A stretch of DNA of 64,000 bases from Ascidiella aspersa (taxonomy: Eukaryota). This document shows positions 40,216 through 64,000 of this stretch, piece after piece. The position numbers and the translations under genes were made by a program. The notes under the pieces were generated by a model. It did not search any database, was not told the DNA's origin, and saw only the letters and a list, made by a program, of their open reading frames with translations. Location of the stretch: the NCBI GenBank assembly GCA_963924565.1, contig OZ004607.1:7688001-7752000 (forward strand), in the 5' to 3' direction. Within the stretch, counting starts at the first letter, position 1, and each line of letters opens with the position of its first letter.

Positions 40216-40315
40216 ATGGACGGCGGACTTATTTTCCTGTTCGCCTTCTTAGGAATCGAAATCGCGCTGGTCGGAGGACTGGTGACCTACCTGCTCTACC
40301 GTCGCCAACCTCCTA
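40216..40315 (+). CDS. PRD gene exon 1: N-terminal signal-anchor/TM helix
   Basis: [33 protein letters not shown]|gtaagt; in-frame TGA upstream at 40183; GC-rich codons; phase 1 matches the next exon. Confidence 0.75.
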
Positions 40316-43300
40316 GTAAGTTATGCTTTTAGTATGTTTAAAATACTACCATAGGCGTATTACAGCTATACACTCACAACAAAATTTTACGAAGGCAAAC
40401 AATATATTTTCAATTGCCAAAAGTGTCAATGTTGTTTGAGCCACATTTTTTGTTTTTATTGTATATTGTAAGTAAAATTAAAAACAACTCGGTCGTTGTC
40501 GACCAAAGGTGGTATTTTTTCATGTTTAATTTGTTTTAGTTTTTTAAATGCCGTTCGTTGTAGCCTAAGCTTAGTTAGAATAATGAATTTAGGGGTAAAT
40601 TAATTTAGGGTTAGGAAAATTTAGAATCCTGCTGCCAATTCGGCTGACTGAAAATCCAATTATTATAGGTTATATCGATAGTGCGTGTTGATTAGCATTG
40701 CGTTGTTTCACTTTAAACTACAATATTCTGATTTAAAAATCAGGACGAATCAATACAAAGGTCCACGGCATTTTTTTAAAACATTCAATCTCTATAGAAT
40801 CGTTTTTGTTTTTGGTTGGAAGTGTATAATTGCCATTATTTTATCAAAATTTTATTTTCTAAACTAAATATAACAGGTTATAGTTAAATAGGCGAAAATC
40901 TTTGGTGGTTTGTTGTTTTAATACAAAATGTAATTGCATAGAGGAGAATACCCCATTTATCGCAAAAATAAACACCGTACTTTGCCCGAGTAGGCTTTTG
41001 AGTGATATAGCATTCATAACGTTCGTGATGTTGAAATAGTGCCCGACAAAAACAACAGATTTATCAGCATGCGCATTGAGTTTGCTATTTAAAGGGCGTG
41101 CTATATGTAAAAAATATTGAAGATAAAATCGTTGTAACGCCATTTCTAAGTTTTAAGATTAATGGGTGATCGTGTTTTTGTCAGTGCAAGATTTTGTTTC
41201 AAAAAAGCACAATGGGACGTTTATTAACGATGAGATATGTTTTATTTTTATTTTCTTTGACCTCAACGTCTGCCTAAATTACTTGGTTTTAACGGATTGC
41301 TTATTTAATATTAAAAATAAATAAATAGGTAATCACAAACAATATTGATACCCAATGTTGCCCAACCATCAAACCAGAGTCCAATATGTCGATTACAGAT
41401 ACCGGTAGCTGCAAAAACGCCTCATACCCCATGATTACAGTCGCTCGCGTTGCAAGCCTGCGCTATTACAGAGGTCATCTAGGCGTATTTACAGGCGCAC
41501 ATAACTTGCGCGTGATATCATATCAACTGCAAGTCTCCCGCCCAGGGCTATCCAACTATAAATGTCAGCTGATTTACATTTCGCGCAAATTGGCGATACC
41601 CGAGATTGCCGTCCAACGAACGTATCGCCTATACACCTCCGGACGCGGAGTTGGATTGTGCCATAGGAAAACAGTCGTCATGTATGTGTTTCTGTGTGAG
41701 TGTGTGTGTGTAGACGCGTCTACGTGTGTGCGTATGCTTGTGCGTAACCTAAAATCTGATTTCCAGCACTTTTATTAATACAAGATTAAACCTCATTATT
41801 TGCGGGCCTGAGCCGTCAGGTTACAATAGTGAAAATGTTGGGTGTATGTTTTCAAATTACTCCAATTCCATTTCAATTAATTGGTCTTTTTAGTTTTACG
41901 TGGCCTTGAACATTTTCGTTGGTCAATGTGCCAATTACTTACAAACACAAGTTATACCAATATTACTTGTTTCACGAAAACACAAAGCATGGCAAATCAT
42001 TTCTAAAAAAACTAATATTTTAAACCGTGTTTGGATTGCTTTGACCAAAACACGAACCCGACCAATTTAATAGATTTACGGCGCACAAAATAATCGTCTC
42101 AATCTATTGTGAATCATCATTCCCAGATACATGGGGCTACTTTCCTAGGTCACAAGACGAAGTAGTCACCAAGTAACGGAATACGTCCTAGATAGAAAAG
42201 ACTCTCGAAAACACCCACGCAATATCTTGTGCAAATCTGATGCATTAAAACTGAGAAAGGCAAGATATCGCCATGTAGTTTTAACTTTTCTACTGATACG
42301 ATTACTAGATAACTCACACCCCGAAAACAACTTATTTAAATGTTAATATTTTTAATTTCGTCGAACAATAACACAGGAAATAGACGACAATAAGTACAAG
42401 TTGGAGTAAATACTATTTAGAAAGTCTAAGAAAGATTTACTTATTTTTTGGTGTGAGTTTAATATTATTTAATAAATCTTAAGAGGCAAACTAGTTTGTT
42501 TTTCATTTTTTGCGCAAAAGTATTTTTCTGATGGAATATACCGAGATAGCATTGAACATAAAATCACAACAGAGGCGCGCCAAACGCTTACCAAGCCAAA
42601 AAAGTCCACCAAATCTTAAAGATCCGAGCTGATAAGTCGAGCACACCAAAACAAAGGAGCGCGATTTATCCTCTCCTTCCTAAAAAGCTCGGCATCGACC
42701 ACCTTCTATATCCTTGAAGAGCGAGGCTCAGGTCACACGTGCCGCGTTTGTTATTGCGTTTTCTTTTCCGTTCGCAGAGCCAAAGCCCAAGCCCAAGTCA
42801 TCGCTGAAGCCCGACGGCAAAGTGGCGACGACCTATGGCGACCCGAACGACTCAAACGGACACGTCCTCATCAACGTTGACGTAAGTGCAGATCAACTGC
42901 CGCTGTGAGCGCACGGGTTTGTGCGATGTCAACGAAACCCCTCAAACAGAGAAATATGTGTTTTTTTCCTTAAACAGAGAATATGGATTTTTTTAACGTT
43001 TTTGACTTTTTTTCTAAAATACTACTAGGCGTTTTACATCTATTTACATGTAGGTTTAATAATGTTTTACGAAGACCAACAATATATTTTAATTGTTTGA
43101 GTATCAATGTTATTTTTGCCGCACTTTTTCTTAATTGTTTATCAAGTAAAATGTAAAACACGCCAAACACCAAATTTAGTGTTTCGTTTGCATTGTTCAA
43201 GTTTTCGCCGTTCTGTGTAGACCAAGCTTTTTCCTAATTTTAGAAAACGTAAAATTTTTATTTTTTTATTTTTAACTACATGTTTTTCTTTTTTTAATTA

Positions 43301-46300
43301 ACATATATTATAACTACAAAGATAAGTCTGAGTAAATTAAACCTTATGCCGTTGTTGGGTAAACCTCAATATCCCAAAGAAAAGTTTTACAAGTGCTGTT
43401 CACCAGTTTTCAATCCTTTTTAAAGTCAATGCATTCCTGGTGTTTTTAAAATCCTTATAAGGACAAAAATTACCTGCTTTGCGTTCGACTTTTCTTTATA
43501 TACATTTTGATGCCAGCAAAGCTTTCCTTAATTAAATTTTCTTTGGGGCCAGCGGAAATGTCTTACTGACCCATCGCTGCTCCGGCAATATTACATATAA
43601 GTTATTTTTCAACTTATATTTCGTGTGTTGCTTTTTGGCGCGAATGGCACCGCCTTTGGTCCAACGCATTATTTTAACGCGAACGTGAATTACCGAAATG
43701 AGGCCCCACCCTACCTCCAATTCCCACGCTCTTACCCGTGTATTGTTGTCTACGCAGGACAAGCGACCCAACAATGTTTCTCCGTCCAACGATTCCTCCG
43801 CATCCTCGTCGCCAGGTGAGTAACCATGGTAACTGTAATAGTTACCTAGCTGTTGGAATCCTTGCATTATTCTTCATCGATTCGACAGCTGAACGTTACT
43901 TGTTGTGAAGCGCTTTTTTTTTGCGCACAAAGCGTTGCTTGTCACCTTATTTCAGCAACGGCGGATAAATGTATTTACGTAGATTTCAGGTTTGGGAAAA
44001 GTGCTTCCATTTACGCATTGCTTTACCCTTTTAAGATAATTTCGTTGGTAAAGCTTGCCGGCGGAATTGCAATCTTGTACTTAAAATAAACTTAATAAAT
44101 CTAATTTAAAATTTTTCGGTATTCACTTACCCTTAGATTTTTTACAGAAGCCCTAATTGCCACAATACGTGCTGTTATACCGGGTGTTATACCCAAGCTG
44201 GGATCCGTGAACCCCTTAAGGATACTTCAAGTTTAGGGGTTCCATAAAATCCTAATTGAAACTTGGTGAACAGTTAAAAATGTAGAAAAGTTACGCTTTG
44301 GTCTTTTAGATTTGATATCATTTTCATATTTGCATATGAGTTTACCGGATACAGATAGTTTAATTTTCCTAAAACGTAATCTCTTTAACTTTCATGACGA
44401 CATTAGTCTACGCGAACCAAAAACAATTTTAAGTGGTTCGCGATAAAAAAAAATTCAAAATCACTGTGTTATACTAAAACATTGTTGTGCTTTTTCATAT
44501 TTTTATAAAATTATGTTGTAATTTAAACAGCAAATTCTCCTCATTTACCTCATCGTATAGACTTTCGAGGAATTAATTGCCAAATGCTTGACGCCAGACT
44601 ACAGACCAAAGCGTTTTTGTAACTCACCAATACACAATATTCATATATACGCGGGGGCAAAGATCATACACGCCTTTGAAGCGAGCAGCCGAGTAGCATA
44701 GGTGGGCCGCGTAATGGTGCCAAGAGCCTCTCTAATGACGTGGTCTGATTGCTACCCCCTCTGTCCGCTAATGAACACTTCCCTGCACTTGTTGACGTAC
44801 CGGCTAATAGACTCGCGCGCGCCTAACTCGCCATTAAGCAATTTGATTTCGATGGGTCATTGTCGCTCGAAGCTGTTTTACGCACTGGCTCGCGGAATTT
44901 CGGAACAAGGTTATTACGCGATTTTTGTTTGGCGAAGTCGGCATCTCTTGACCTTTCATGCGCGCCTGTGGTGTGATCCGACCAGCGAGTTTTTCGCCTA
45001 TCTAAAACCTCGGTTTATGCCAGTTCCATTAACAGCAATAGTGCTCAAATTTTAATGACTGCGAAAGTGGATCGCTGTAAGTAAAATAAAAAAACTTATG
45101 TTGTTTTAAGTGAAAAAAAGCTTCTTAGGTTCGAGCGAGGGCTAAAATCACAACATTGTAGATCGCAAATTGCGATTTCATCCGTAGCATGCCAAATGCA
45201 AATGCATCTATCTCTAAATTCGTTCAATTGGAGAACAGCTTTAAGGAAAATTCCTTTTGTTTATGTTTACATCAGTAACGCCTAATTTTAAACACATGAA
45301 CAACATGTTTGTTATTCAACTATACTGGGATCTCGATGTGGAAAATAAATTTAAATAAACTTATTTCTTCAATTGTAAAATTGTTCTTTTTCCAGAAGAA
45401 CAATTTTACAATTAAAACAATGCCTCGTAGCAATATTCAAAATTATTTATTTTTTTGTTTAAATTACACACGCACTTAAATCAAACCAATCTAAAAACGA
45501 AATATTGTAGTAATCTGAAAAACAGTAGACGCATGACAACAAACGAAAATCCCACGCACGAATCGCAGCCTGGGATTACGGCGTTTCGGGCAAGATTAAA
45601 ACTGTTGCCTAAGACTCATCTCGTCTCCGTAAATCCTCTTTCGCTGACTATCGCAGAGCATATTTCCTCCACGCTTGTCAACGCAAAACTTGTGCTTTGC
45701 ATTTACGCAAAAATGATACTGAAGTTAAGCCCAACAAGGGGCAGATCCAGGGGGAGGGGCACGTAGCCATTAACAAAATAAACGAAAATAAAAGTATTTT
45801 GTGGTGTCCCCACAACAAACTGTGTGGTGTCATTGAGGTTAGTTATTTAATCCATCACATTTGTACGTCACATTTGTATGTCACGTTATGGCGTAACTTG
45901 GTGCCGTCATTTCTAAAAGAAAATGTATGCCCTCAAACAAATTCCTGAATCTGCACCTGGAAACGCATAGTACGTTTTCAATTGAAAACCGTCCCGGGCT
46001 TATTAATGAAAGTGAGCTTTATTTCGTTTTTGGCAGAGATTATTTGTTATTGTATGCGTGCATGCGATAAAAAAGTGACATAAAAGGAATTTACAAGCTT
46101 TTATGCGATGATAATAAGTTAATTGAATTTGGGTACACTATGTACGGATCTGCAATGTAGCTTAATGATGAATTGCAAAGCCACAAAGGTCACGTAGATC
46201 GACATCATCTTGATTAAAACGTTAAGATACGAACGTCAGTTAATGTCGATTAACCTAATTTTTATTAAACATTAAAAATGTTCACCGTGAACAAATCCAG

Positions 46301-49300
46301 ACTATAGGTTTTAGGAAGGCGAATGTTTACGCCGTGAACAGGCAAGTCTTGCGGCCTTTGCTTAGACCGAGCGATTTGCTTTTGCACAAGCCTCGGGGCC
46401 TCTGCGCGGTTTCGCGCGCTAAGGCTGAAGCCACGCATACACTGCTTCGAATATCAAGCATATCGCTATACAAGAGATTAACTCACGACCTGACATGCCT
46501 TTTTGTCAGAATTTCTACAGCTCTCCTTTTGCTGATTTCCACCAATTGTATCGAATGACCAATTAATCTTTCCCTGTGTTGACAACGCAATACCACGCTT
46601 TCACGGAAATCACCTGTTAAAGGAAAAATAAAACTTGAAAAAAGTCATTTCCTAAACCTAAATTATGCATTCGTAATGCTAGGTGAAGCAAGTCGTTGAA
46701 AATATCCTTGAGTTTTTATCGTTAGGATTTCTAAATTAGTAGTTAAAGCATCTTTAACTATTGCTAAATGTAACGTGTTGAATAGTAGCCAATAAACTGC
46801 ACCTTAGCGAGTAGTTTAACAGACACACCTATTAATAGCCTGTCAACGCACATTAAAAAACAAACTCCATTTTTTACCTAGCTGTTATCCAAGCTGCCAA
46901 TATAATTACCAGTCATTTTTATCGACGCCTTATTAAAGCGCTTGGGAATTGCATTTACTGATTAAAAAAAAACTAATTTCCGGGCGTTGGAAGTCACAAA
47001 GGTCTTTATAACATAAATAAACACCATAGCATTTCACTTGTTTTTATAGTTTTACTCGGTTTTACTTGGCGATGAAATAACAATACCCAAAAGCAGAAAA
47101 AAATTGCCGAAAAAAATCCAGACGGAGACGTCACAAAGTTACGTCATAACTGAACACGGTTATCGTTCGACGTAGTGCGCAAATATGAAACTAAAATCTT
47201 AGTTTAAATACATACAACGGGATGACCGGTAAAAAAGAGACAAAAAGAACATTTTACCGGAAAGGGGTACCTGCAAAACTTATTTTACCGTAACGCCTTT
47301 CCGGACCGTTCCGGCTTACTTCTAGCACGGATTTGCCTAATGTAAGCTTTCCAACATAACACCATCGTCACTAATTATTTGTTTACTTTCAAATACAGGC
47401 GTTCGCTTACATAGCTGTGACCTATTGTTCCATCATTTTAGATCCGAAAAAGAAGCTTCTGGATAGCGACAGCGACGTAAAGATCGAGATCGAACCATCC
47501 GCTCCCCCGCATCCCATTGTAGAGGAGGAGGAAGAGGTGCCTCCCTATTCACCACCTCATACTATTGTTCCTGTAAGTCCAATCGGATATTTACCAGTGT
47601 TGTAACCAGTCATTCTGTGGCACAAGTCCCAGTCAAGTCATTTGGAAAGTAACTTGAGTCCAAATCAAGTATTTTGCAAAAGTACCAAGTCAAGTCCCAG
47701 TTCAAGTCATGGATTGCTCAAGTCTAGTCCCAGTCAGTTCAATATAAGAGCAAGCTAATTTCAAGTCATGTCATTGACATAAAAGTAAAGCGTTAAACTA
47801 TAAAAGTTGGTTAAATTGTCCGATTATGAGCAATAATTCAACGAAAAAAGAACACAAGCGCAATATACAGCGTTAAAGTTGTTCAACGTACAAAACTTGA
47901 GATAAATTTTAATGAAAAACACTGAAGTTCAAGTCAGGACATTTGTCTAAAAGACTTAAGTCAAGTCAAGTCATTTAAAAACAGTGACTCAAGTGCATTT
48001 AAGTCCAATGGATAAAAGTTATTACAACAATCATATTTCTCTAAGTTTGGAAAAGACTGATATTAAAGGGGTCCTTGTCACAGTGACGAAGAGGTTGCAT
48101 ATACATTTACAAGAAATTAAGAAACGTTTTATTTGATGTAAAAACCAACTATTTTTTAACAGGATTCATGAATGTTTTTGTTATTAGATATGGTGTAAAC
48201 GCTTTTATTATCCATATGTTTTTCATATTGCTGTGCACAGTCGGTTGCTAGCATGTAGTATTATTGCGGCTGTCGTAAGTTATATTATCGCATTTAAATG
48301 TAGCTCGGTCGCAAGCCTTTGGTTAAGTAAAGACGTTCCCCTGGGTATAACAATCTGAAAATATATAGAAATGTGGTCCTTGTTGAAACGTCAAATTGTA
48401 CCGCTTTACAGTTCTTATATATCGTTAGTATCGTTGGTTTTTCGTTAGTTTTTTTACGGGATATTATTCAAATATCTTTCATTTGCGATATTTTGTATAG
48501 AAACAATATTTTATCGTTTATACTCCTTTCGCAGATGGACAGGTCGGCATTTGAGGAGGAAATCGTCCCCACCAACATTCGCTCGCAAGAGGAGCATCCG
48601 ACTCCCAGACCGCGCCAACCACGAGAAATAGAGGAGCATCTCGCCAAGGACATCGACTCTTCCGATGCCTGCAGCAACCAATCTGTTCCTTGTAAAGCTG
48701 TAGATGAAGATGTTGTGATCCCGATCGAACGCCAGGGTGACGAGGAGCGTGTCCCGTCTCCTCTCTACCGCCGAGCGTCTTCTCCATCCCCTGAGAGCCT
48801 CACGGAGGAAAAGAGAAGACCGGAAATTGTGGCTCATCAACCTGACGAGGAAATAGTTCATGGTAAGTCGCTCAACTGTGGAAAGGAAACTTGAAAGTCA
48901 CCTATTTAGTGCCCCAACAAGTATTTGTTTCTAAAGAACATTTCTGTTTTACCTTGTTGTTCATTAAAAATCTTTGCACATTTACAATGAAAGCTATAGA
49001 TAGTATGATACATCGACATATGTTTTTGTATGTTTTCTGTTTTCATTGGTCGATTTTATCGATTGTTCTGGCATACCGTGTTGAATAACAGAAGTTAAAT
49101 AATGTTTTAAGGTTTATTTTTTTCCTGAGGTATGTTTTTCGTTTTGGTACTTGCACCGATGACAGTTGCACATTATTGAAAACAACACAAAAATTAAACA
49201 AATAAAACCTAGCAGATGAAGTTTCTCGTAAACTCAACACTTAAATTAATATTAAATGACTTTGTGGAATCATTTTATCATTATCACTAGCTATAGTGAA

Positions 49301-52300
49301 ACGCACATAGTTGCTTCAACACTCACTGAGCGTGTGCTATATTTTGTAGACAACGTATTGAACGAAACCGCCCCTCCGCAAATCGCCCCTCGGCTTACGG
49401 GAGATAAACAGCACGAGCGTAAAGACTCAACTTCTTCTTCGTCTTCTTCCTCTGCAGAGCACTCGGACGACGACCACGAGAAGCCTCTTATCCCGGTGGA
49501 GGAGCTTCCGATAAGCGACTCTCGCGCTCCAAATGAAGAGGAAATCCTCCACTCTTCTGTAGTCAAGGAAACGCACACAAAGCAAACCCGCCTTTCCTCT
49601 TCCACATCTTCGGAAGTTGCAGTTATCAAGAAGAGGTCAGATCACAGCTCTATGGAGGAGGTTGAAATCCTGGAGGACGGGCCCGTGGCTCTCACCTCCG
49701 GGGACGACAACACGGTGGTCGACAAGCACAGGAGCAGGGTTCGGAGGAGAGTCATCCGGAACAAAGAGATCATCGAGTACATCGAGGAGGAGAACATCGT
49801 GATCAAGAAGCACAAGAAAGTGTCCAACGTCACTCGCCAGGAGACGTCGAGCTCTTCGTCCTCAGAAGAGGAACAGGAGGAGTTGAAAGTAAAGAAGAAG
49901 AAAAAGAAGAAGGTAAAGAGAAAGAAGATCCAGGTGTCGGAGTCTTCTTCTTCCTCATCAGAAGCCTCTTCTTCTGAGGATGAAATTGAGGTCGAAGAGA
50001 ACCCGAAAAAGAAAAAGTCTTCGAGGCACATGGAGGTCCAAACGATGCAGGTGCCTACTTCATCTACGGATGAAGCAGTCGTAAAGGTGAAAAAGATCAA
50101 GAAATCCAAGCACAAGAGAATTCAAGCGACTGTTGCGTCAACAAGTTGCAGTTCTTCCGAGGAAGAAACCAAAGTTTTTAAGGAGAGACGCCAGAAAAGT
50201 TTGCGTCACATGGAAGTGCAGACCTCCAAGTCTCCGCCATCCAGCTCCTCGGAAGACGACTTCAAAGATAAAAAGGTCGAAAAGGATCTGCGACACATGG
50301 AGGTGCAGACCTCCAAAGGTCCGACGCCGATTTCCAGTTCCACAGAAGACGAGATCAAAGTCGAGCCGATGCCGATATTGGAAACCACCTACCGCCAAAT
50401 GGATCTGCATCCAACATCGGGCGTTCCTGCGCAGCGCTCGAGGTCCTTCAAGAAAGAGCTAACCGTCGAACAAACAGAGAGCAAGAAAATTACAATGAGG
50501 AGCATGGAAGTACAAACAAAGGCCCCATCATCCAGCTCGAGTTCTTCGGAAGACGAAAAAATAGTCGAAAAGATTGAAAGAAAAGAAACATCTTTGAGGC
50601 ACATCGAGGTACAAACCTCCAAGCTTTCGTCTTCAAGTTCCAGCTCGTCTGAAGACGAAAAGGTCGTCGAGATCAAAACAGTCAGGCATATGGAGGTACA
50701 AGCAACGGTTTCTTCATCGTCCAGTTCTTCTGATGACGAGACTAAGATCGCGATAGTGAAGCGAGATCCCGTGAGCGTACGAGATGTCGACATCCAAGTG
50801 ACCCCGGCTAAGTCCTACGAAGAAAGAGCTGACATCTCTTTCGAGAAGAAATCCGAGATTGTGATTCAGGATGTCGAGAGGTCGGAGAGACGCATCGAGA
50901 TGCAAGCCCCGGAAGACGTGGAGGTGTGGGAGTTGACGAAGACCACCTGGGACAAGCAGAACCAGACTTCGCGTCCTCCGAGCAGCTCTTCCAGTTCGTC
51001 GGAAGAGGAAAAGATCGCGAAGAAGAAGAAGGAGTCCTCCGATAAGCAGATCCAGGCAACCAAGTCGCCGTTCACATCCAGCTCTGACGAGGAGGACCGA
51101 AGAGTAGAGCTGCTCTCCATCGAGAAGACCGACCGTCGCATCATGTCGAGCAGTTCCTCCTACAGCGAGGTCTTCCCAAGAACGAGATCCGTAACCGACA
51201 AGGAGACTCAAGCATCCAGGTCCTCCTCCAGCGCCTCGGAGGAGACAAGGAGGAGGTACGTCACTCTCGCTTCCCACACACATCATCAGAAGCAGGAAGA
51301 AGACAAGACCTTCTCCACCGAGTACTACTATGACGTCACCAGCAAGCAGCAGAAGACCCACGTCACCAAGACCCTCATCGAGCGGACCATGTCGCCCACG
51401 CGTGACGTCACACATCACCACGTGGTCAGGGAGATTCGGGAAAGTCCCACCACTTCGGGTTCGATATTTTATATATTGCTTTTAGTGTTGAAAAAAAATA
51501 TTCTTTCTATGTATAAAAAGTGTTTAGAGTACAATGTGAACAAAAACCTGTGGAACGTTCTATGATAACAATTTATTAACTAAGTTTAAGATCAAAACCT
51601 TTATACCTTCTGAACGCTGTCGAACACAGCTATCTAACTCTTGTTCTTCCTCAGTCATAATTGTTAAAGATGCCAAACACGAAATTTAATTTTAACAAGG
51701 TATTTTCGAAATTTGATTTATATATACGGTATCTTAGTTGAAAATCGCTGAACGTGTTCTAACAAGGCTATATCTAACACTTATTTTCACCAGTAACAAC
51801 AATGGAAATTCCCACCCCCAACAACGATATGTCCATGATGGAGGTAACTCTGCAGCCGAATTACAAAGACGAAGAGATTGAACCAATACATGAAAGTACG
51901 CATTTAGCTTGTTACAATAGTTATATAAAATATACTGATTTCCTGATTTGTGAAAGATCGTTGAATGGAAACTTTAAAGTTCTGCTATTACATCGCTTAC
52001 AGGCTTTATCGTGCTACCGATGCATTTATGATTAAACTGCTTGCATTAACTTCTTTGGTTTAACAACAACCGTTCCATCATTGTTTGGTTAATAAATTAA
52101 CAAGATTTAAGTTTCCTAAACGTCTTTGATCTATAATTTCTTGGCAAATTTGACATGCGTGGCAAATTCTAAAAGCTTTGTCTTTGTTGCAACAACCCCT
52201 CTTATGTTTTTGATGCACTGTCGACTAATAGAACCGCTTCTTAAAACAGTTTACTCTGAAAACTAAAAGCAAACAACAAAATATATCAGCAGTAAAGGTC

Positions 52301-55300
52301 TATATTAACTCTAATGTGCTACTTGTGCTTAATGTTTATCTTATCCAGTTTCAACATTGGAACACTCCTTACCAGAAACTAAAGATCTCTCGGTGGTCGA
52401 GGCGGAAGTCGAAGTTCACGAAGGTAAGTAGCTTGTTTTGTGGAATTAAGATATAATGCACATTAAAACTTAACATTACACACTTTTTGCCGGTACTCAA
52501 TATGGGTTTTGCATACATAGGCTACCGCCTAAAACGCAAAGTTCTTAACACTATAGTAAACACTTCTGGTTCAGATATTTAGTAAAATGAATATTTTGTC
52601 GGTAGAACATCAGAACCTATAAAAAACCTAACACAAATAGGCCAATGTTTTGTTAAATAAACATAACAAATTTAGGTTAGTGTAGCAGTGATCAATTTAC
52701 AGAAATCTACAGTCATTTGTTTCAGATTTTATTAATATACACCCCCATTTAATAATAATAAAAAGCAGCTCATCTGGTAATTGTAATTGTTAACCAACGT
52801 TTCAGCAACTTATTCAAATCGCCTTCTTCACAGTGAGTGACACCGAACGCTAGTAGTATAATATGTAGAAACCACATAGGGGGAAAATGGAAGAAAAAGC
52901 GCAAACAGCGTTAAGAAAACAATTAGCGATAACGTATAGCCTTATTCGTATACCCCATAAAATATATACACATTTTCACACTAGCTAAAAATTACCGTAA
53001 ATGGTAAAACTGAAACACATAATAGCCTGTATGAGATGTTTTCTACTCCCTGTGTGTTAAACTGCTTACTTTTAGTATCAACGATGGAAATAAATACGTT
53101 GGAACATTCCGCGCCAGAACCAGAACACATACTTTCGTCCATGGAAGTCGTTTTGTCACCCAGGCCTAAGGAGGAAGTAGTTGAACTCAAATTAGAAGAA
53201 GGTTAGATGCTTAACAAAACAATAAATCAAGATAGTATATGCAATAGTGTGCATACCAACGTACCGTTGAAGGCTATACACTTTTGTGATAAAATGCACG
53301 AGTAAATTTTGCAAAAAATAACATGTTAGGCTACTGCAGTTTCATTGTAAACATGCCCATCGACGAAGCGTTTAGACCAGGGCTGCGGAGTAGGTTAAAA
53401 ATAATACCCGAGTCCGACTCCGGCAAAAAAAATAAACCCGAGTCCGACTCCCTAATCCCGAGTCCGACTCCGGTCAAATGTGCGATTTTGTCGTGTCCCG
53501 AGTCCGGCCTTGACTCTTCAGCCTGTATTCCGCCAATTTACGTAACTGAAATAAGTGGATATTCGGCAATCCACTTATAGGGGTGACGTATAATACATGG
53601 TTGGAAAATATTACACCCTTTGCTATTTCACTTTTACAATTTTTAATTGGCGGCCATATCAGTTTTAAAACTTGGTACTGCGCATGCGCATGTTTTACGT
53701 GACCTTACTCGACTCCTCGAGTCCCGAGTCCCGAGTCCCGAGTCTTGGCGAATGTGCTAATATATTATTACGTCTTATACTTTAAAGAACCAACGATTGA
53801 AACAAGCGAGTTTGAGCACAGTGCCCCTGAGCACGAAACAAAATTTTCGACGATGAACGTGGTTTTGTCGCCCAAGTTTAAAGAGAAACAATTTGAATTT
53901 GAAGTTTCTGAAGGTAACCTGTTTTCTTTTTTTAAATGAGCAGAAGTTAATGCGTTGACTCTATGTAGTTAGACTTGAGTGGCCACTATAGCTTCAAAGT
54001 TTGTACTAAGGGCCAATGAATACGACGGTGTTGTAAAAAGTCATTTTGAAAGACCCAGCCAAGTCCTTTGTAAAATAACTTGAGTCCAAGTCAAATCCCA
54101 GCACAAGCCATCAGTTGTCCAAGTCAAGTCGCAAGTCAATTCCAAGTCAAGTCTTTGTCATGAAATAAAAAGTTTAAAATTGGTAAAATGGCCAGGTTAT
54201 GAGTAACGACTGAACTCAAAATAACACAAACGTAATATATAGAAGGCAACTTGTTTATGTGCAAAAAGGAGGATAAATAACCAACTTTTTGAACCAAAGT
54301 CGTTTGTCCAAAAGACTTGAGTGAAGTGAGGCATTTTAAAACAGTTAATTAAGTGCACTTAGATTAAGTCATTGACTTGAGTCAATACAACACTGGATAA
54401 CGCCAAACAAAGTAATGGTACAATACTTAGGGTCGGCTTACTAAAACTGAAGGCCTTGTTAAAAAAACAGGCTAAAAAAAGTTTTTTTGATAGATCCTTC
54501 AGATCTAACAAATAAATCTAACAACCGTGCGCGAAATCACGGTTTTTAATTGCGTTTACCTAATTCTTGCAGATAAGGCAGAAGCATTGTCGCCTTCTTC
54601 GGATGACGAGAAGGAGTTGGTTGTCGAAGAAAGAGAAGAAGTGGTTGATGCAGCGGTAAAACGCGACGTTTGTTTTTAGGCAGGCGCCACACGTAGCCAA
54701 TTGTTTGTTAGGTTTAATTCCTCTGACTCTCGAAATAATTTGATCCAAAATACTGGCGTTGCCATTTTTGCTGCTTTTATACAGAAACCGATATGCATCT
54801 TTATTTAATTTATCACGGTACCTATATAGTTTTAACAATATCTTACTTCATATAACTGAAATTAGACCCTACAGCAAGTTAAACTCCTTAAATTAGAGGT
54901 ACTTGGGTTTGTGGATGGTTTAAAAACGTACGAATAAATGTGAAGAGTTTTCTCTGAAACTATTAATTGATAGTTTTTCTCCTAAAAGATAAATTCATTC
55001 GGTAAACTATTTTATCAGATACCGTGGATTAGAACAACGTGTAGACCCGTTTGTTTCAAAGGAAATCTGTTCGTTTGTTTCAAAGGAAATCTGCCTTTAG
55101 AGAAAAAAAAATAGTTTGCGTTGGGATTATTTTCCTTTTTATCCTGAACTTTTTTAGCAAGTCGCTAGAATCACTTAAACCTAGGCTAGGAGCCTTTGCG
55201 ATTTCCGTTAATTTCTGATAACTTGTTCAAAGGTTGCCGACTTCCAGGAGACTTCAGTGTCGTCGATGTACAAAGACTTGGACAGGGATATTGACTTGGA

Positions 55301-58300
55301 TGACGATTCGTCAACGGAACGCGCAATTTCGACCGCTACCTCGACCTTGACCAGGGATCACGTGGAAGAGATAATCGTCGAAGAACCGATCTTGTAAGTT
55401 AACACTTGAAAAAAAATTTAAAGACTGAAACTTTACTGGCTTAAATAATTGATCTCAGGAAAGAGTCGATTTTCAGTAATATTTGCGAGTATGAGTTGAA
55501 TGTCCAAAACTAGACATTTTCGCCACTTGAAATCGCAAAACTCATTTCAATTCCGAGTAAAATCTATTTCTTTTAGTACTTTATCGTAAAAGACGAAGTT
55601 TAGTTTGGTTTCAGTTCAGTTAAAAGTATAACTGCTTGAAGGCCTAAATCACTGCCAGGGTTACAGCTTTTATATGAACATTTAGCTAAGATTTATTTAA
55701 AAGTATAGATTATTGTCTTATTACTTATTCTGTTCAACACCGACATTCAGCCTTATTTAAACGTGTAATACTTAAAGCCGGCCTTTTTTGTTTTACTATT
55801 CAGAAAATCGCGCAAGGATATCAAGTTCACTTCCGGCTGGCAGCGCCAGGTGACCTTGGACGACCTTCTCGAAGCGGGAGTCGTTACCGAGTCCACGGTT
55901 GAAAAACTCGAACATGGTAAGAAGTGCTATTTAAAAATCATATGATATGGTTTAACTCCTTTCTTTTACTATAGCTCTTACACTTTGTCAATTGACAACG
56001 TTCGGTATGTTCACTTTTGTTTAACATTATGCAGTTCATTAAATCGATTTGACAAATCGATTGATTGATTAAAACTAACTTTTTATTTTATTTCTTTAAA
56101 AAATAAACAAGATGGGTGCGCAGCAATAGATAACTGTAAAAAGTACATAAACCGCCAAAAAGAAAAATTGACAAATTTCGCCGTTCTCTCGAATTAGTTT
56201 TGAATTACTCACCTTTTGTTGATGTCAGGTTACCTGTGTATATATAATTCGAATAGGCACAATTCCTAAGAACGAAGAAAATATTTTCGTCCATAGCGAA
56301 TATATAGGCTACGGTAATTTGGTAAGCCAATACCCGTCTATCTGTTTTCGTGAATAAGCCACGGCGAAATCCCTGCGATCGCCGGCGGCTATTTTTGCAA
56401 TCTTCACGTTATGCTGTATGACTAAACATCTTCTGAGGATCGCAACTTAAAAACATCAGCAGTTTTTTCTTGTTTTTTTCGTGTTCTGCGTAACGCCTGC
56501 TGATTCGTCTCGTCGACACAAACAAAACCTTTTTATTACTTACGTACATTAGTGGGCTACTATATTTAAGGTCAAGGGTCATAGGTGCAATAACAATATA
56601 GGACGTCACGATTTAGGCATGACATCAAAGCAATCACAAAATAAGCTATATGAGTTTTGGAAATATAGTTTCCAACAGTTTTTGCATTGATAGCTGTTTC
56701 CGCTTTCCGCGTAATACAAACGTTGATTCACTAGGTATAGCAAACGACTACATTCTAAATCAATAGATCAAAAATTCTTTATACTTCACCTGTCCTAATC
56801 AAAGCCATTTTTTAATAAGTTCTTAAGAGAAATATATTACGCCACAAAAAAGGCACTATCTTTTATTTCTAATGAATGAAAAACTTGAACACGGTCATTC
56901 ATTTGAATTAAGAGATTGATGATGCCTTATTTTGTGGCAAAATATATTTAAGAACTTAAATAAATGACTAAGTTTAAGACAGGAAAGTATAAAGAGCATT
57001 TACTTCAACTTGTACCCATTGTCGTCACTTACCTGCAGGGCGAGGAGATTTCTTTTTTTTTTACAAATACAGTTTGTGACATACATCAATTATACTTTTA
57101 CGTAGGAACGATTGAGGAAGCAGACGTTGAGAAAACGCTACAGAGGTATCTGGTTGGAAACGACCCGATCGCCGGGTTGCTGATTGAGGAAACTGGAGAG
57201 AGGATGTCAATATTCGAAGCTTTCAAACAGGGATTAATCAGAAGAGGTGATTTAACGTTGTCATGTCCTGACAATTCTTATTGATAGTTATTTGGTTTAC
57301 TCTGTACAAGGGAACTCTGTCTATCAGCACCTTTACCAACCTTAGCGTAATATACTTTCATTTAACTTATATCTAGTGTTTTACATAAAATAATTCATTT
57401 GTATTGTGTTAATAGAGAATATGAAGTGCAAGTAAAGGTAAACCTAAAACTAAACTGTTTTCAAAATCATCTAACGGGCTGCAGTAGCTAACCTATAAAT
57501 TCAGAGACAATTAAACATCTAATCGTGGACAATTTTCATAGAATATAGCTAATCGGTACCCCTAATCAAAGTTATTTCATTCTACGAACTGTACGACTGT
57601 AGTGTCAACTAATATTCTTTGTGCTCACAACAAAGGCACTTCTATCAGTCTTCTTGAGGCCCAAGCGGCAACGGGACGCATCATTGACCCGACAACCGCA
57701 AACAAGATGTCCGTAAAAGAGGCAAAGCAGGAGAAAATAATCGACCGGCAGTTCGAAGCAGTTCTGACAAGGTACAGTGCATATAAGCAATCGTTGGACA
57801 ACTTTTTGCACATCAAAATTCGTCTTAATAAAATATAGTTAATATCGTCTTAATAAAATATCCTCAATTGTTATATAAGGAGATTAATTTAGATAATGTT
57901 TAATGACCTAATCCTAAATTGGAAAGTTGCCAAACATAATAAATACACAAAAAACAGAAAACTAAATAAAACATATGTATTACAATATAGATTTACACAA
58001 AAATAACAAACGAGCAATGTTGTTATCTTATGAACAATTGTGGCCACCACAGTGGCACTATTTAGAATTGATTACAAAATTTAAATAATAGCCGTTACAC
58101 GATTGCACCATAATAAATGTATGAAATACATTTTTAAACCAACCCATCACATTCAATGTGACAAACCAGAATTGCTCGCCTGACGTACCGTACCAAAGAT
58201 AAACAAACGAATAAAAGTTTCAGCGAAGTTGTCTCGCTTGACCTTGGCCCGTGATTTTCAAGGTCAAGCAGGATAGGTCGAGCTTACTTGACCTCCGATG

Positions 58301-61300
58301 TCCAACCGGCCATTTCCGTTACCGAATTTCACTTTCGAAGTGTCACCTGGTGCTAGTGAGTAACATCGCCCAATGTGACCTGTTAATCGCTCGCGAGGTT
58401 CCGTTTATTTACATGAGCCAAGTTTAACGCATCGTCCGGTCTTGAATGAAAGAAATTCGCAAACTTAAAATCAATCTAGCTCATCTCGCGAAATCTTACA
58501 AATGTTTACGTTTTCTCCTGCGAAGATTCAATTTTTATTATTATAAATTTCTGTAAAAGCATAAATAAAGACATCATTCTTTAAAAAATTCTTAATTAAA
58601 AGAAAACTGAACAAAACAATTGATGATTTTGGCATGTTTTTGTCAGCTTTTGTATAAATAACCTAGAGCAGGGCCGGTGTAGCATTTTTGTTTGGGGGTC
58701 AGAACTTTTTTTAGGGATGACGTCGCAATATTACGTCATGACGTGCTGTCATTAAATAATTAATCTTAAAAAACTTGTTGTTCTCTATTGAACTCGTACG
58801 CACAATAACGTATTAAAAATTGATTGGAGTTCGCGAGAAGTACGAACCTTTTTGTATTCACCTGACTGATGACCCTGGGTCCGCCCCTGACCCCAAGGGT
58901 CGTTATGACTACATTTGTTGGCAGCGCTATTTTTGCTCTGATTTTAATCGACGTTGCCAGATTTAACTTTACTGGGTAAGCTAATCTAATAGCTAAAAAA
59001 GTTGAATAATTCAAGGAAGATTTTTTTATAGCTTTTTTAACCCTTGCGCCAGCTCCAATTTAAACACCTTATCAGAATACTCTAGCAAAGCTAGTAACAA
59101 TTATTACCATTGCTAGAGTATTCTGCTATTACTGATCAGGAATTAACAAAATGTTCTATCACTTACAAAATACAAAGCATCTAACATCTCAAGTAAAAGC
59201 CTCAAACCTAGCAACCATCACCAAGGAATTAGGTTGGCTCCCATTTTTAGCTGTAATGCACTTTTACTGACCTTCACTTTGTGTGACTATATAACTGCCA
59301 TTACCAGGGCCGAAAAAGCTGTGTTCGGTTACAAGTCGCGAGGCAGCGACCACAACTTGTCATTGTTCGAGGCCATGAACCAGGGAATCGTCGTTCAAAA
59401 CCACGGGATCCGTTTGCTTGAAGCTCAAATTGCAACCGGAGGTAAAACCATTTTCAAAAACGTGTGTTTGCCATTGCTATCGATAAAAATTGTATGGTAT
59501 TATGAATGTTTATCATTTTAGGATACTTGTTACAACAATCTTAGTTGTTTAAATAATATAAAAGGGCGTATTTTTATGAAACCCCAGACTATTGGTAGCA
59601 GGTTTCTACTTGTCGGTCACGCTTGCCAAAGTTTTCTTCTGACAGCCTGTTTGGTTTTTAAACTTTTTACCCAATCCATACTGCTTTTGTATGTTTTTGA
59701 CTTTTTTGTTTGGAGCGATTTAAAACAACAATATATATAAAAAAAAATACAACAGTTATGCCCCAGCAGTGGAATGATCAGTTTGATATAAAGAAAGCTT
59801 TTTTGATCAGAATTAGCGACGGGCAATTGGCTTACTCTTGTTTCTATAAAACTTAACTGATGATGGGAAATATTGTTATTGAGTCGCAGCCTCACGTTCG
59901 AACTGCTGGTTAACAGTAACGCTCAGAGCAGTGTTTCTTAACCTTTTAGCGCTCTTTGAGCTGACATGAAATTTTCTCGTACCCCTGTCTACAATAGCCG
60001 AGGGTAGTAAATAAAATTGCAATAATAGGAATTAAACTCAGTGTATTTATACCGTAAGTGTTAAATGTATGCATTAAAAACAGTCTTGTAAGTTCAACAA
60101 TATTTACAAAACACGAACAATCAGTCATTTTACTAATGGCTTTTTTGTTGTTGCTTTTAGTATAAACGCATACTTTACAAATCTACCTAAACAGCGCATA
60201 CTTTCAAGCTGAATGCCATACCCCCTGCTTTCGTGCTTCGTACCACCGAGCGATACACGTACCCCTGGTTAAGAACCCCTGGCTCAGACTAAACATGGTA
60301 CAACCCACCAAATTTCGCACACGTGTAACCTGTACGGTCGTTTGCCAAAGTGTATGTAAGTGTGTGTCTCTTTAAAGCATAACTTACCTGGGCTCAGCCT
60401 TATCGTGCTTCTAGATCTAGATTGTACGGGCCAAACATTTTAAATAGGTAGCATTACATCACGCTGTTTTGAATGCAAAGTGGTTTACCGATATTTTTTT
60501 CTTTCCCAAAGGCGTCATCGACCCACAAGCAAACCATCGTCTCCCGGTCGAGGTCGCTTACGATCGAGGACTCTTCGACGAAAACCTTCACGAAATCCTG
60601 GAAGACCCATCGGATGACACCAGAGGCTTCTTCGACCCCAACACTGAAGAAAACCTCACTTACATGGAGCTTATGCAGAGGTAGATTGACTCATATAACG
60701 TTGTGTGCATTGTAGGCCCACCTAGACTTTTTTAAGATGCTGAATCTGTTCGTAAGTGTCATTTGGCCGCTTGAAACAATGGCCTGTAAAATTAAAAAAA
60801 TGGGTATTTTTCAGGTAGTTAGATGTAGTACATCTTGATAAACAACCAATTAAACATTTACCATACTTAATTTTACCTACTAAAGTATTCTAGCCTTGCC
60901 CTTGTAATGTAGATCAATGATATTAAATAGTGGCAGGATTAAAATATGCGTCTTTCTAAATAGTTTAAATGCTCAATAATGGTAAACCACTATTCATATT
61001 GTTATGTCTTTTCCGTGTACATCGAGTATTTCTGAGGCACTTGGTGTTGTTTTTTCTTACGTACAAACAACAAATGCTTTCTCCTTCCAGGTGTGTTACA
61101 GACAAGGACACTGGTCTTCTCCTGCTTCCGTTGAAGAAGAAGAAACAGGAGGAAGCTGACGTGGTCCAAGTTCCAGTGGAGGAATCAGTGGCATCCGATA
61201 CAGCGGTCGTCGTACAAACAGGTAAGGAAGACACAAGCTTATCGCTGTATTTTATTAGGTAACGTCCTGGATACACAACCTAAACAGGTTATAGTTTGGT

Positions 61301-63890: not shown

Positions 63891-64000
63891 GTAGATTTAT
63901 AGGAAGTTTAATTTATGTAAACTAATGAAATACATATACGGAAAGTCACATCTTACCCCCGTTTTGTGAAATTCTCAGCTTAGGTTTAAAATGCTCCCTC

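What the first reader, a model, noticed from the sequence alone, without database searches (positions are those of the whole stretch)
49830..51245. Array of about 13-15 LC8 (dynein light chain)-like QT motifs: a possible LC8-zippered substitute for the plakin coiled-coil rod
Seen: repeated units RHMEVQT (x3), RSMEVQT, RHIEVQT, RHMEVQA, RDVDIQV, RRIEMQA, DKQNQT, DKQIQA, DKETQA, KRIQAT and KKIQVS, spaced about 25-40 aa apart, most followed by S(4-8)-[ED](2-3). Established: LC8/DYNLL binds K/R-x-T-Q-T-type motifs with a Gln anchor (VQT/IQV variants occur) in disordered regions, and multivalent arrays (ASCIZ, Nup159) dimerise and stiffen chains; Ser runs followed by acidic residues are CK2 consensus sites. 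Inference: the arm sits where plakins have their dimerising rod and may form a phospho-tunable LC8 ladder.
Basis: partly seen in the sequence, partly recalled or inferred. Interest (0 to 1): 0.75.

Follow-up and report, generated by a model that had tools for sequence, protein, structure and literature searches.

The report
Conserved Gln-motif array, sea-squirt plakin arm
A sea-squirt gene for a filament-binding (desmoplakin-type) protein has a long floppy arm with 13 copies of a short, carefully preserved motif that resembles docking sites for the small clamp protein LC8, which might pair two arms in place of the usual coiled rod; binding has not been tested.

Summary
Window 49916-51244 lies in one 2.1-kb exon (49350-51458, + strand). 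Spliced contigs of one public run join this exon to its neighbours. Splice phases link it in frame to desmoplakin-type plakin-repeat exons.

It encodes 13 units: an 8-residue motif with an invariant Gln, in 11 of 13 followed by a Ser run and acidic residues.

This is not chance. Motif counts are about 10 times those in shuffles. In the six best units the motif has pN/pS 0.10 at saturated synonymous sites, against 0.70-0.76 in the flanks.

The motifs fit the published LC8 rules at positions -4, -3 and -2 in 13 of 13 units. Five carry a VQT anchor, and VQT peptides are shown to bind LC8. The genome encodes a canonical LC8.

Against LC8:
- no TQT anchor;
- Ala at +1 in five units;
- P/D/E at +2 in one of 13;
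- linkers of 12-61 residues, unlike the 3-5 of LC8 rods;
- no orthologue found;
- binding untested.

No plakin domain or rod was found, so "rod substitute" is plausible but inferred. I put LC8 binding at about 0.35.

The scan has also flagged LC8-type arrays elsewhere in this genome.

The parts
49350..51458 (+). Large exon C (about 703 codons) that holds the array. It starts in phase 1 after ...ttttgtag and ends in phase 1 before gttcga.
   Evidence: Open frame. In run X2, contig records 12 and 13 lie on 49349-49486 and 49457-51457 and run on into other exons. X2 depth falls to 0.3-2.8 in the flanking introns. Pfam finds no family.
49916..51217 (+). Array of 13 Gln-centred 8-mers (positions -5..+2). 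They lie at 49916-49939, 50024-50047, 50108-50131, 50204-50227, 50291-50314, 50498-50521, 50597-50620, 50684-50707, 50780-50803, 50888-50911, 50948-50971, 51038-51061 and 51194-51217.
   Evidence: Enrichment over shuffles. Codon-level selection.
49943..51244 (+). Eleven Ser/Thr-run plus acidic clusters (CK2-type S/T-x-x-D/E), each 1-5 residues after a motif. Two further clusters lie upstream at 49427-49474 and 49844-49873.
   Evidence: 13 clusters; 50 S/T-x-x-D/E sites against 33.8 +/- 4.6 in shuffles.
51254..51458 (+). Non-repetitive tail of exon C (His/Thr/Tyr-rich, about 67 residues). It contains the longest stretch of exon C without Pro, Gly or a Ser run (54 residues).
47442..47572 (+). 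Exon A. It starts in phase 1, so at least one coding exon lies upstream. It is acidic and Pro-rich and has a PPxY motif.
   Evidence: X2 record 9 joins 47572 to 48535. Sequence.
48535..48862 (+). Exon B (109 codons, acidic and Pro-rich).
   Evidence: X2 record 9. Of 4 listed variants, 3 fall at third codon positions.
43698..43815 (+). Candidate first coding exon: ATG, 39 codons, ends ...CCAG|GTGAGT in phase 1. Inferred only.
   Evidence: It was the only substantial one of 2 ATG-bearing frames listed that end AG|GT[AG]A in phase 1 within 28000-47440 (the other is 2 codons long). Sequence. It fits the two extra letters AG that X2 record 9 matches at 47440-47441.
51794..53913 (+). Four phase 1-1 mini-exons: D 51794-51895, E 52349-52423, F 53076-53201 and G 53788-53913. 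They carry a second repeat (TMEI.T ... SMEV[VT]L.P).
   Evidence: Sequence and splice sites. X2 has depth in the bins over D, E and F, and a depth-21.5 variant (the depth of record 13) lies in D at 51864.
54573..55916 (+). Exons H (54573-54655), I (55233-55393) and J (55804-55916). Their phases run 1>0, 0>2 and 2>1, which links the arm in frame to the first plakin-repeat exon (from about 57105).
   Evidence: The splice phases are my inference.
57105..64000 (+). Plakin-repeat (Plectin repeat) exons, desmoplakin type. They continue past the window end to about window 71365 (L007:7365).
   Evidence: Pfam PF00681 in 6 of 6 open frames tested, 5 of them above the cut-off. Best solved structure is desmoplakin 5dzz, E 7.9e-47. 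L007 open frames.

Best explanation
What is shown. The region is the core of a long, disordered, strongly charged arm. The arm spans about 1,100 residues over exons A-J. It belongs to an expressed ascidian protein whose C-terminal part is made of desmoplakin-type plakin-repeat domains, which bind intermediate filaments. No plakin domain and no coiled-coil rod were found.

The arm carries 13 copies of a composite short linear motif. Each copy has an 8-residue strand-type motif with an invariant Gln, in one of two classes:
- class I: R-H-M-E-V-Q-T-S
- class II: D-K-x-x-Q-T/A

In 11 of 13 copies a Ser run ending in acidic residues follows. The motif is a selected functional element.

What is inferred. 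The motifs are docking strands for the dimeric hub LC8 (DYNLL). Each LC8 dimer would take one motif from each of two parallel arms. Several weak non-TQT sites would then act together to pair two chains in register. That would yield a two-tailed filament binder without a coiled coil. Because the linkers are long (median 24 residues), I expect a flexible ASCIZ-like ladder, not a rigid Nup159/KANK1-type rod. Multi-site CK2-type phosphorylation of the Ser-acid clusters just C-terminal of each site would add negative charge next to LC8's positive surface and tune occupancy.
For: Gene and expression:
- Spliced contigs of run X2 join exons A-B and run from exon C into neighbouring exons.
- X2 depth is exon-shaped, while X1 and X3 cover the introns evenly.
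- Splice phases chain exon C to the plakin-repeat exons.
- The repeat exons match PF00681 and desmoplakin 5dzz.

The motif is real and selected:
- Strong enrichment over shuffles.
- In the six class I units, positions -5..+1 have pS 0.95 and pN 0.094 (ratio 0.10). The flanks give 0.70 and 0.76.
- There is no DNA-level tandem repeat.
- Against the reference, exon C carries 14 synonymous and 12 non-synonymous variants (pN/pS 0.24). Only one (R to K at -5) falls within positions -5..+1 of the 13 motifs.

Fit to LC8:
- The printed rules are: Gln at 0; mid-sized residues at -1/+1; no large hydrophobic at -4; a large residue at -3; no aromatic at -2; a slight preference for positive charge at -5.
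- These are met at -4, -3 and -2 in 13 of 13 units, and -5 is R/K in 10 of 13.
- A strict rule filter passes 6 units against 0.35 in shuffles. A lenient one passes 12 against 0.84.
- VQT-anchored peptides of ZFPM1, SON and MAST1 bind LC8.
- Class II units resemble the DKxTQT type of binders in the same table.
- Two unlike sequence classes share only the LC8-relevant features.
- Disorder by composition: hydropathy 0.374 against a boundary of 0.415, and 36% charged residues.
- The genome encodes a 90-residue LC8. It is identical to human-type DYNLL1 chains at 71 of 89 aligned positions, and the aligned stretch GRNFGSYVTHETKHFIYFY is unchanged.

Precedent: weak non-canonical sites bind cooperatively in KANK1 and turn a disordered linker into an LC8 assembly.
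Against: - No TQT anchor occurs (0 observed).
- +1 is Ala in 5 of 13 units, and I found no TQA or IQA anchor in the LC8Pred paper.
- +2 is the preferred P/D/E in only 1 of 13 units, and is Met in one.
- The three IQT peptides in Table 2 of PMC6607443 did not bind, so the four Ile(-1) units may be weak.
- Linkers of 12-61 residues are unlike LC8 rods.
- The near-perfect coupling to a Ser-acid cluster is not a described LC8 feature. It could mean the recognised unit is longer and the partner is different.
- The only library hit is fish lrrc66 (E 3e-4). Its repeats align to these units but have Lys where these have Gln.
- The mini-exon repeat keeps M-E-V but has Val or Thr at the Gln position.
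- No orthologue was found, so Gln conservation across species is untested.
- The one RNA raw-read run, of which about 6% was read, gave zero depth on these exons.
- No binding or multimer model could be run.
Confidence: 0.35

Rival explanations
1. The composite unit (basic residue, alternating hydrophobic/acidic strand with Gln, then a phosphorylatable Ser-acid cluster) is a docking site for a different, still unidentified partner, or for an intramolecular contact such as the protein's own basic plakin-repeat grooves. On this reading the resemblance to LC8 motifs is coincidental.
For: - Selection on the motif is shown, but not the partner.
- The motif is coupled to a Ser-acid cluster in 11 of 13 units, which is not an LC8 feature.
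- Fish lrrc66 repeats (R-H-L-D-I-K-A-P-S-P, then a Ser-acid run) align to the units with Lys in place of Gln.
- The mini-exon repeats keep M-E-V without Gln.
- The +2 preference and the TQT anchor of LC8 are not met.
Against: - The Gln is the single invariant residue across two otherwise unlike unit classes (table).
- No alternative partner with a Gln-centred strand motif was identified.
- The lrrc66 match is marginal, with a very high composition bias (score 36.5, bias 240.7).
Confidence: 0.35
2. The arm is only a lineage-specific entropic or polyampholyte spacer with CK2-type phospho-clusters (a Nopp140/treacle-like alternation of acidic Ser clusters and basic blocks). On this reading the recurring motif is a leftover of unit duplication.
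For: - Composition: 18% Ser, 36% charged residues, near-zero net charge.
- No relatives in 1.84 billion representatives except one marginal hit.
- No paralogue in the genome.
Against: - Synonymous sites between units are saturated (pS 0.95) while the 7-residue motif is kept (pN/pS 0.10 against 0.70-0.76 in the flanks).
- No DNA-level repeat remains.
- Leftover similarity would decay evenly across motif and flanks.
Confidence: 0.1
3. The regularly spaced Gln residues in a Lys-rich arm are acyl-donor sites for a transglutaminase. The protein would be covalently cross-linked into a scaffold, as envoplakin, periplakin and involucrin are in vertebrate cornified envelopes (recalled knowledge).
For: - The Gln is invariant, and the arm has 77 Lys in 702 residues.
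- Plakin-family context.
Against: - No test was run here.
- The flanks do not resemble the Q-x-P type preferences I recall for transglutaminases.
- Strict conservation of positions -5 to -1 as an alternating strand is not explained.
- I did not check the genome for a transglutaminase.
Confidence: 0.07
4. The units are phospho-regulated SUMO-interaction motifs: a hydrophobic core followed by a CK2-phosphorylated Ser-acid stretch, as in PML or PIAS1 (recalled knowledge).
For: A hydrophobic strand followed by a Ser-acid cluster resembles phosphoSIM modules (for the layout).
Against: A SIM core (three of four residues from V/I/L; pattern recalled) overlaps 0 of 13 motifs. The invariant Gln is unexplained.
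Confidence: 0.03

Closest known systems
ASCIZ/ATMIN, a multivalent LC8 client (7 sites in fly, 11 in human)
   Same: Many LC8-type motifs spread over a long disordered region. Linkers of tens of residues and sites of mixed strength would give a ladder of two parallel chains (search listing and abstracts of PMC5963919 and PMC10046861; discussion).
   Different: ASCIZ sites are mostly TQT, and binding is shown. Here there is no TQT, each site is coupled to a Ser-acid cluster, the protein is a filament linker and not a transcription factor, and binding is untested.
KANK1 L2 linker with 15 or more LC8 dimers (bioRxiv 10.1101/2025.07.16.665182)
   Same: A cytoskeletal adaptor whose long disordered linker carries many weak, non-canonical LC8 sites that act cooperatively. 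The idea that LC8 gives a disordered linker a defined extended form is already in print (abstract and sections 10 and 12 read).
   Different: KANK1 linkers are 3-4 residues and form rigid rods, and its anchors (TST, VNT, IGC, VMA) differ. Here linkers are 12-61 residues, so a rigid rod is unlikely.
Nup159 DID-Dyn2 rod
   Same: An array of QT-type motifs that pairs two chains (as described).
   Different: It has five or six strong motifs with 4-5 residue linkers. It is a nuclear pore component.
Desmoplakin, envoplakin and plectin (plakin family)
   Same: The C-terminal plakin-repeat domains are of desmoplakin type (PF00681; 5dzz E 7.9e-47).
   Different: Classical plakins have an N-terminal plakin domain of spectrin repeats and a long coiled-coil rod that dimerises them (recalled). 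Neither was found here. The arm is disordered instead.
Fish lrrc66 cytoplasmic tail repeats (KAM4549135.1)
   Same: A repeated unit of basic residue, R-H-hydrophobic-acid-hydrophobic-x-A/T, then Pro/Ser, a Ser run and acidic residues. It aligns unit for unit.
   Different: It has Lys where this array has Gln. The repeats are near-identical (recent). It is a membrane protein of unknown function (search listing only). The match is marginal (E 3e-4).

Membership tests
LC8 (DYNLL) client motif | Gln at position 0 flanked by mid-sized H-bonding or hydrophobic residues at -1 and +1 (PMC6607443 section 9) | tested here: inconclusive
   Gln is present in 13 of 13 units. [TVI]Q[TV] occurs in 7 (VQT x5, IQV x2). 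The other 6 have Ala at +1 (5 units) or Asn at -1 (1 unit); one of the Ala units also has Met at -1. VQT is validated in 3 of 3 peptides of Table 2, while the 3 IQT peptides there did not bind.
LC8 (DYNLL) client motif | Canonical TQT anchor | tested here: not met
   0 TQT in exon C. Non-TQT sites are known but are rarer and weaker.
LC8 (DYNLL) client motif | -4 has no hydrophobic residue larger than Ala; -3 is at least as large as Val; -2 is not aromatic | tested here: met
   13 of 13 units at each of the three positions (table; rules).
LC8 (DYNLL) client motif | +2 prefers Pro, Asp or Glu; hydrophobic residues are disfavoured | tested here: not met
   +2 is S x6, T x4, K, M and P. The preferred set is met in 1 of 13 units, and 1 unit has a hydrophobic residue.
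LC8 (DYNLL) client motif | The motif lies in an intrinsically disordered region | tested here: met
   Shown by composition only. Mean hydropathy is 0.374, below the charge-hydropathy boundary of 0.415. 36% of residues are charged and 27% are Ser or Thr. 17 of 702 residues are aromatic. Pfam finds nothing.
LC8 (DYNLL) client motif | The organism encodes LC8 with a conserved binding groove | tested here: met
   PF01221 has 5 matches in the genome. The best is a 90-residue open frame, 71 of 89 positions identical to chain 6gzj_A (E 5.7e-51). The aligned stretch GRNFGSYVTHETKHFIYFY is identical.
LC8 (DYNLL) client motif | Physical, Gln-dependent binding of LC8 dimers | not testable with these tools
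The numeric LC8Pred matrices are in a figure, not in the text I read.
LC8 (DYNLL) client motif | Anchor conserved in orthologues | tested here: inconclusive
   No orthologue was found: the word search gave none, and the full HMMER search gave one marginal fish hit. Only paralogous units and within-species variants could be compared.
Plakin family | Plakin-repeat domain(s) at the C-terminus | tested here: met
   PF00681 in 6 of 6 downstream open frames, 5 above the cut-off. Desmoplakin 5dzz E 7.9e-47. More repeat exons in L007.
Plakin family | N-terminal plakin domain (spectrin repeats with SH3) | tested here: not met
   None in exons A-C. None in the 10 longest + strand open frames of 33682-46555. 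None by eye in 21700-47400. The 5' end of the transcript is not fully mapped, so exons further upstream cannot be excluded.
Plakin family | Long coiled-coil rod between the head and the repeat domains | tested here: not met
   The longest stretch of exon C without Pro, Gly or a Ser run is 54 residues. Exons D-J are short, acidic and Pro/Ser-containing. No coiled-coil predictor was available.
CK2-type acidic Ser clusters | S/T-x-x-D/E consensus (recalled) in runs that allow hierarchical phosphorylation | tested here: met
   50 sites against 33.8 +/- 4.6 in shuffles, and 13 Ser/Thr-run plus acidic clusters. Phosphorylation itself is untested.
SUMO-interaction motif (phosphoSIM) | Hydrophobic core with three of four residues from V/I/L (recalled pattern) | tested here: not met
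   0 of 13 motifs overlap such a core.

The most novel reading that the evidence does not exclude
An ascidian-specific, rodless and headless desmoplakin-type protein is dimerised not by a coiled coil but by a ladder of up to 13 LC8 dimers on a disordered arm. Each rung would be paired with a CK2-type phospho-switch. Filament cross-linking valency would then be set reversibly by LC8 level and phosphorylation. This would be the first case of LC8 multivalency taking over the dimerising role in an intermediate-filament linker.
Probability: 0.22. Interest if true: 0.7.

Novelty: new variant of a known kind. Interest (0 to 1): 0.45.

Why it matters
If the array binds LC8, it would add a filament linker to the short list of proteins that LC8 organises through many weak sites (ASCIZ, Nup159, KANK1, RSP3). 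It would also show that a plakin-repeat protein can become two-tailed without a coiled coil.

It offers a natural test set for LC8 prediction. There are 13 non-TQT sites in two sequence classes, each with an adjacent phospho-cluster.

Even if LC8 is not the partner, the data show a short linear motif kept under strong selection inside an otherwise fast-evolving, lineage-restricted arm. That motif is a concrete target for a pull-down.

The value is limited because the arm has no detectable orthologue, the organism is not a standard laboratory model, and nothing has been measured.

Tried and rejected
Searches that led nowhere:
- Orthologue search. The word search with exon C returned nothing. 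It only sees proteins 0.55-1.75 times the query length, and its words were probably dominated by low-complexity runs.
- The full HMMER search of 1.84 billion representatives gave a single marginal hit, fish lrrc66. I take that hit for an analogue in composition and layout, not an orthologue.
- Own-genome search: no paralogue of the arm.
- Pfam on the arm: nothing.
- ESM Atlas: not available for this sequence.

Readings I rejected:
- SIM reading: 0 of 13 motifs overlap a SIM core.
- Recent-tandem-repeat reading: no DNA repeat and saturated synonymous sites.

Membrane anchor. Earlier notes on this genome describe membrane-anchored plakin-repeat proteins, so I looked for one here.
- There is an ATG-led open frame with a transmembrane-like helix and a perfect GTAAGT donor at 40216-40315. 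Its phase fits exon A.
- However, it ends in TA, whereas X2 record 9 shows AG just before exon A.
- No intermediate phase 1-1 exon was convincing.
- It has no paralogue in the genome.
- The better candidate first exon is 43698-43815. Neither candidate is confirmed by reads.

Other limits:
- I did not score the motifs with LC8Pred. Its matrices are in a figure and its web server is out of reach, so I used the rules printed in the text.
- I did not open any supplements. They may hold full motif lists that bear on whether VQA, IQA or TQA anchors are known.
- The claim that no paper links plakins to LC8 rests on three searches: 'plakin' + 'LC8' (1 unrelated review); 'plakin repeat' + 'ascidian' (0 papers); and DYNLL1 with plakin names (8 of 266 listed, none relevant by title or abstract).
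All searches were exon by exon.
Full report
**1. What is at the coordinates**

The window is G000:C1:7688001-7752000 of a 308.6-Mb assembly. Earlier notes of this scan call the organism a sea squirt. A connexin cluster on the minus strand (PF00029, 117 bits) fits a chordate; I recall connexins from vertebrates and tunicates only.

The finding lies inside one long + strand open frame, 49256-51565. By splice sites and phase, the exon proper is 49350-51458.

There are 13 Gln-centred motifs between 49916 and 51217, spaced 20-69 residues apart.

The motifs form a composite unit with Ser/Thr runs that end in acidic residues:
- Anchoring on those clusters alone gives 13 clusters.
- Every cluster has a Gln within the 12 residues before it.
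- 11 clusters have one of the 13 motifs there.
- Two motifs lack a Ser run.

**2. It is more than chance and more than a recent repeat**

Counts in exon C against 5000 residue shuffles:

| Pattern | Observed | Shuffle mean |
|---|---|---|
| [TVIMN]Q[TVA] | 14 | 1.47 (maximum 7) |
| [MIV][ED][VIM]Q[TAV] | 8 | 0.02 |

Tandem Repeats Finder reports nothing across the array except the Lys run at 49885-49928.

Codon comparison of the six class I units (R-H/S-M/I-E-V-Q-T/A):

| Region | pS | pN | pN/pS |
|---|---|---|---|
| Positions -5..+1 | 0.95 (saturated) | 0.094 | 0.10 |
| Eight codons before | | | 0.70 |
| Five codons after | | | 0.76 |

Caveats on this test: the units were chosen by their motif, which inflates the contrast. 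The flanks were compared without gaps.

Against the reference, the X2 contigs differ at 26 places in exon C: 14 synonymous and 12 non-synonymous, pN/pS 0.24. The only non-synonymous change within -5..+1 of the 13 motifs is R to K at -5. A Gln-to-Glu change hits the degenerate upstream unit T-R-Q-E-T. About 1.6 hits were expected in the motifs by chance, so this count alone proves nothing.

**3. The gene**

Evidence from the runs:
- Runs X1 and X3 cover exons and introns evenly. X1 matches the reference and is probably its source.
- Run X2 has exon-shaped depth and spliced contigs.
- Record 9 joins 47572 to 48535 and carries 618 further letters upstream.
- Record 12 enters exon C at 49349 with 28 letters before it.
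- Record 13 covers 49457-51457 and carries 530 letters beyond.
- I therefore take X2 for cDNA-derived, although its kind is not on record.
- The one run on record as RNA (X4, about 6% read) gave zero depth on these exons.

Exons downstream of exon C:
- Four phase 1-1 mini-exons: D 51794-51895, E 52349-52423, F 53076-53201, G 53788-53913.
- Then H 54573-54655, I 55233-55393 and J 55804-55916.
- Their phases chain in frame to the first plakin-repeat exon at about 57105.

The repeat exons match Pfam Plectin repeat in 6 of 6 open frames tested, 5 above the cut-off. Their best solved match is desmoplakin (5dzz, E 7.9e-47). They continue for about 7.4 kb past the window end (L007).

Upstream of the arm:
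- Exon A starts in phase 1, so at least one coding exon precedes it.
- The best candidate is 43698-43815: ATG, 39 codons, CAG|GTGAGT. Its last two letters fit the AG that X2 record 9 matches at 47440-47441.
- A transmembrane-like ATG exon at 40216-40315 also fits by phase but ends in TA. No linking exon was found.
- No plakin domain appears in exons A-C or in the 10 longest upstream + strand open frames.
- The longest stretch of exon C free of Pro, Gly or Ser runs is 54 residues.

As modelled, the protein is a disordered arm of about 1,100 residues followed by desmoplakin-type repeat domains. It has no head and no rod.

**4. Relatives**

- The arm has no Pfam family and no paralogue in its own genome.
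- The word search found nothing.
- The reading of all 1.84 billion representatives found one hit, at E 3e-4. It is a 2850-residue fish protein named lrrc66 (KAM4549135.1).
- That protein's tail is built of near-identical repeats that align unit for unit with the array. They have basic-R-H-L-D-I-K-A-P-S-P and then a Ser-acid run, with Lys where the array has Gln.
- The score carries a very large composition bias.
- The papers listed for LRRC66 give no function (search listing only).
- I could not reach orthologues in other ascidians.

**5. Comparison with LC8 motifs**

I read sections 9 and 12 and Table 2 of PMC6607443. I also read passages of PMC12057147, and the abstract and sections 10 and 12 of the KANK1 preprint 10.1101/2025.07.16.665182.

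The printed rules are:
- Gln at 0, with mid-sized residues at -1 and +1. Charged residues there abolish binding.
- +2 prefers P, D or E and dislikes hydrophobic residues.
- -2 is free but not aromatic.
- -3 is at least as large as Val and is often K or R.
- -4 is polar and never a large hydrophobic residue.
- -5 is slightly positive.

The 13 units compare as follows:

| Position | Residues seen | Rule met |
|---|---|---|
| -5 | R/K in 10 | slight preference met |
| -4 | H, D, R, S | 13 of 13 |
| -3 | K, M, I, V | 13 of 13 |
| -2 | E, Q, K, R, D | 13 of 13 |
| -1 | V x6, I x4, M, N, T | mid-sized in most |
| +1 | T x6, A x5, V x2 | Ala is uncertain |
| +2 | S x6, T x4, K, M, P | preferred set in 1 of 13 |

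- A strict filter passes 6 units against 0.35 in shuffles. A lenient one passes 12 against 0.84.
- VQT anchors bound in 3 of 3 peptides of Table 2 (ZFPM1, SON, MAST1). The 3 IQT peptides there did not bind.
- Class II units (D-K-Q-N-Q-T, D-K-Q-I-Q-A, D-K-E-T-Q-A) resemble the D-K-x-T-Q-T binders of the same table.
- No TQT anchor occurs.
- The genome has five Dynein_light matches. The best is an intact 90-residue frame, 71 of 89 positions identical to DYNLL1 chain 6gzj_A, and the aligned stretch GRNFGSYVTHETKHFIYFY is unchanged.
- Composition places the arm on the disordered side of the charge-hydropathy boundary (0.374 against 0.415).

**6. What I conclude**

Shown:
- There is a selected, composite short linear motif array in the disordered arm of an expressed, rodless desmoplakin-type protein.

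Inferred:
- The partner is LC8. I put this at about 0.35.

Reasons for LC8:
- The single invariant residue across two unlike unit classes is the Gln.
- Its neighbours follow the LC8 rules.
- VQT anchors are validated.
- Multivalency is known to rescue weak sites.

Reasons against LC8:
- the unmet +2 preference;
- Ala at +1 in five units;
- the tight coupling to Ser-acid clusters;
- the lrrc66 repeats with Lys in place of Gln;
- the mini-exon repeats that keep M-E-V but not Gln.

If LC8 does bind, the linkers of 12-61 residues (median 24) predict a flexible, possibly heterogeneous ladder of the ASCIZ kind. The rigid rods of KANK1 and Nup159 depend on 3-5 residue linkers.

Rivals are listed with their odds in the Rival explanations section. 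A SUMO-interaction reading fails its core pattern in 13 of 13 units.

**7. Novelty**

LC8 ordering a disordered cytoskeletal linker is already described for KANK1. I found no paper that links plakin-repeat proteins with LC8, and none that describes plakin repeats in ascidians. These searches cover only the held open-access library.

The scan's own notes list seven other LC8-type calls in this genome, and two membrane-anchored plakin-repeat genes. I did not test those.

I rate this a new variant of a known kind. Interest is moderate because nothing has been measured and the arm is lineage-restricted.

Noticed in passing
window 51794-53913: Four symmetric (phase 1-1) mini-exons of 102, 75, 126 and 126 bases encode a second repeat (T-M-E-I-x-T ... 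E-H-S-A-P-E ... S-M-E-V-V/T-L-x-P). It shares M-E-V/I with the main motif but lacks the Gln. It looks like exon duplication inside the same arm.
   Followed up: partly
window 40216-40315: An ATG-led open frame encodes a transmembrane-like helix followed by R-R-Q and ends at a perfect GTAAGT donor in phase 1. It is phase-compatible with exon A, but it ends in TA where the X2 contig implies AG. It has no paralogue in the genome. It may be an alternative first exon or a separate small gene.
   Followed up: partly
P0001 (fish lrrc66, KAM4549135.1), residues about 560-2100: About 30 near-identical tail repeats (basic-R-H-L-D-I-K-A-P-S-P, then a Ser run and acidic residues) align unit for unit with the ascidian array. 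This may be an analogous composite motif in the cytoplasmic tail of a membrane protein of unknown function.
   Followed up: partly
window 47700-48100 and 52700-52900: Two intronic stretches have enormous word depth in the DNA-like runs (up to 148,410 and 26,712 in X1, against about 63 elsewhere). Many contigs break there. They are very high-copy repeats built of caagtcaagtc-like words.
   Followed up: no
window 15394-28064, minus strand: A cluster of connexin genes. The one at 21291-21671 appears to continue in a second coding exon at about 19396-19713, so the coding region seems to be split by an intron. I recall this as unusual for vertebrate connexins.
   Followed up: no
window 32285-32600: A tandem repeat reads as F-S-P-E-S-L-V-L-F about nine times in one + frame (27-base period). 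It lies in the region between the connexins and the plakin-repeat gene.
   Followed up: no
window 47530-47560 (exon A): A PPxY-type motif (V-P-P-Y-S-P-P) follows an acidic run. It is a possible WW-domain ligand in the N-terminal part of the arm.
   Followed up: no
L007:9401-9619 (window about 73401-73619): The next open frame downstream starts with a signal-peptide-like stretch and has a transmembrane-like helix followed by R-F-C-C-R-K. It is probably the first exon of the neighbouring gene.
   Followed up: no
window 49838: A C/G variant in runs X2 and X3 changes Gln to Glu in the degenerate upstream unit T-R-Q-E-T. None of the 13 main Gln residues varies in the listed variants.
   Followed up: yes
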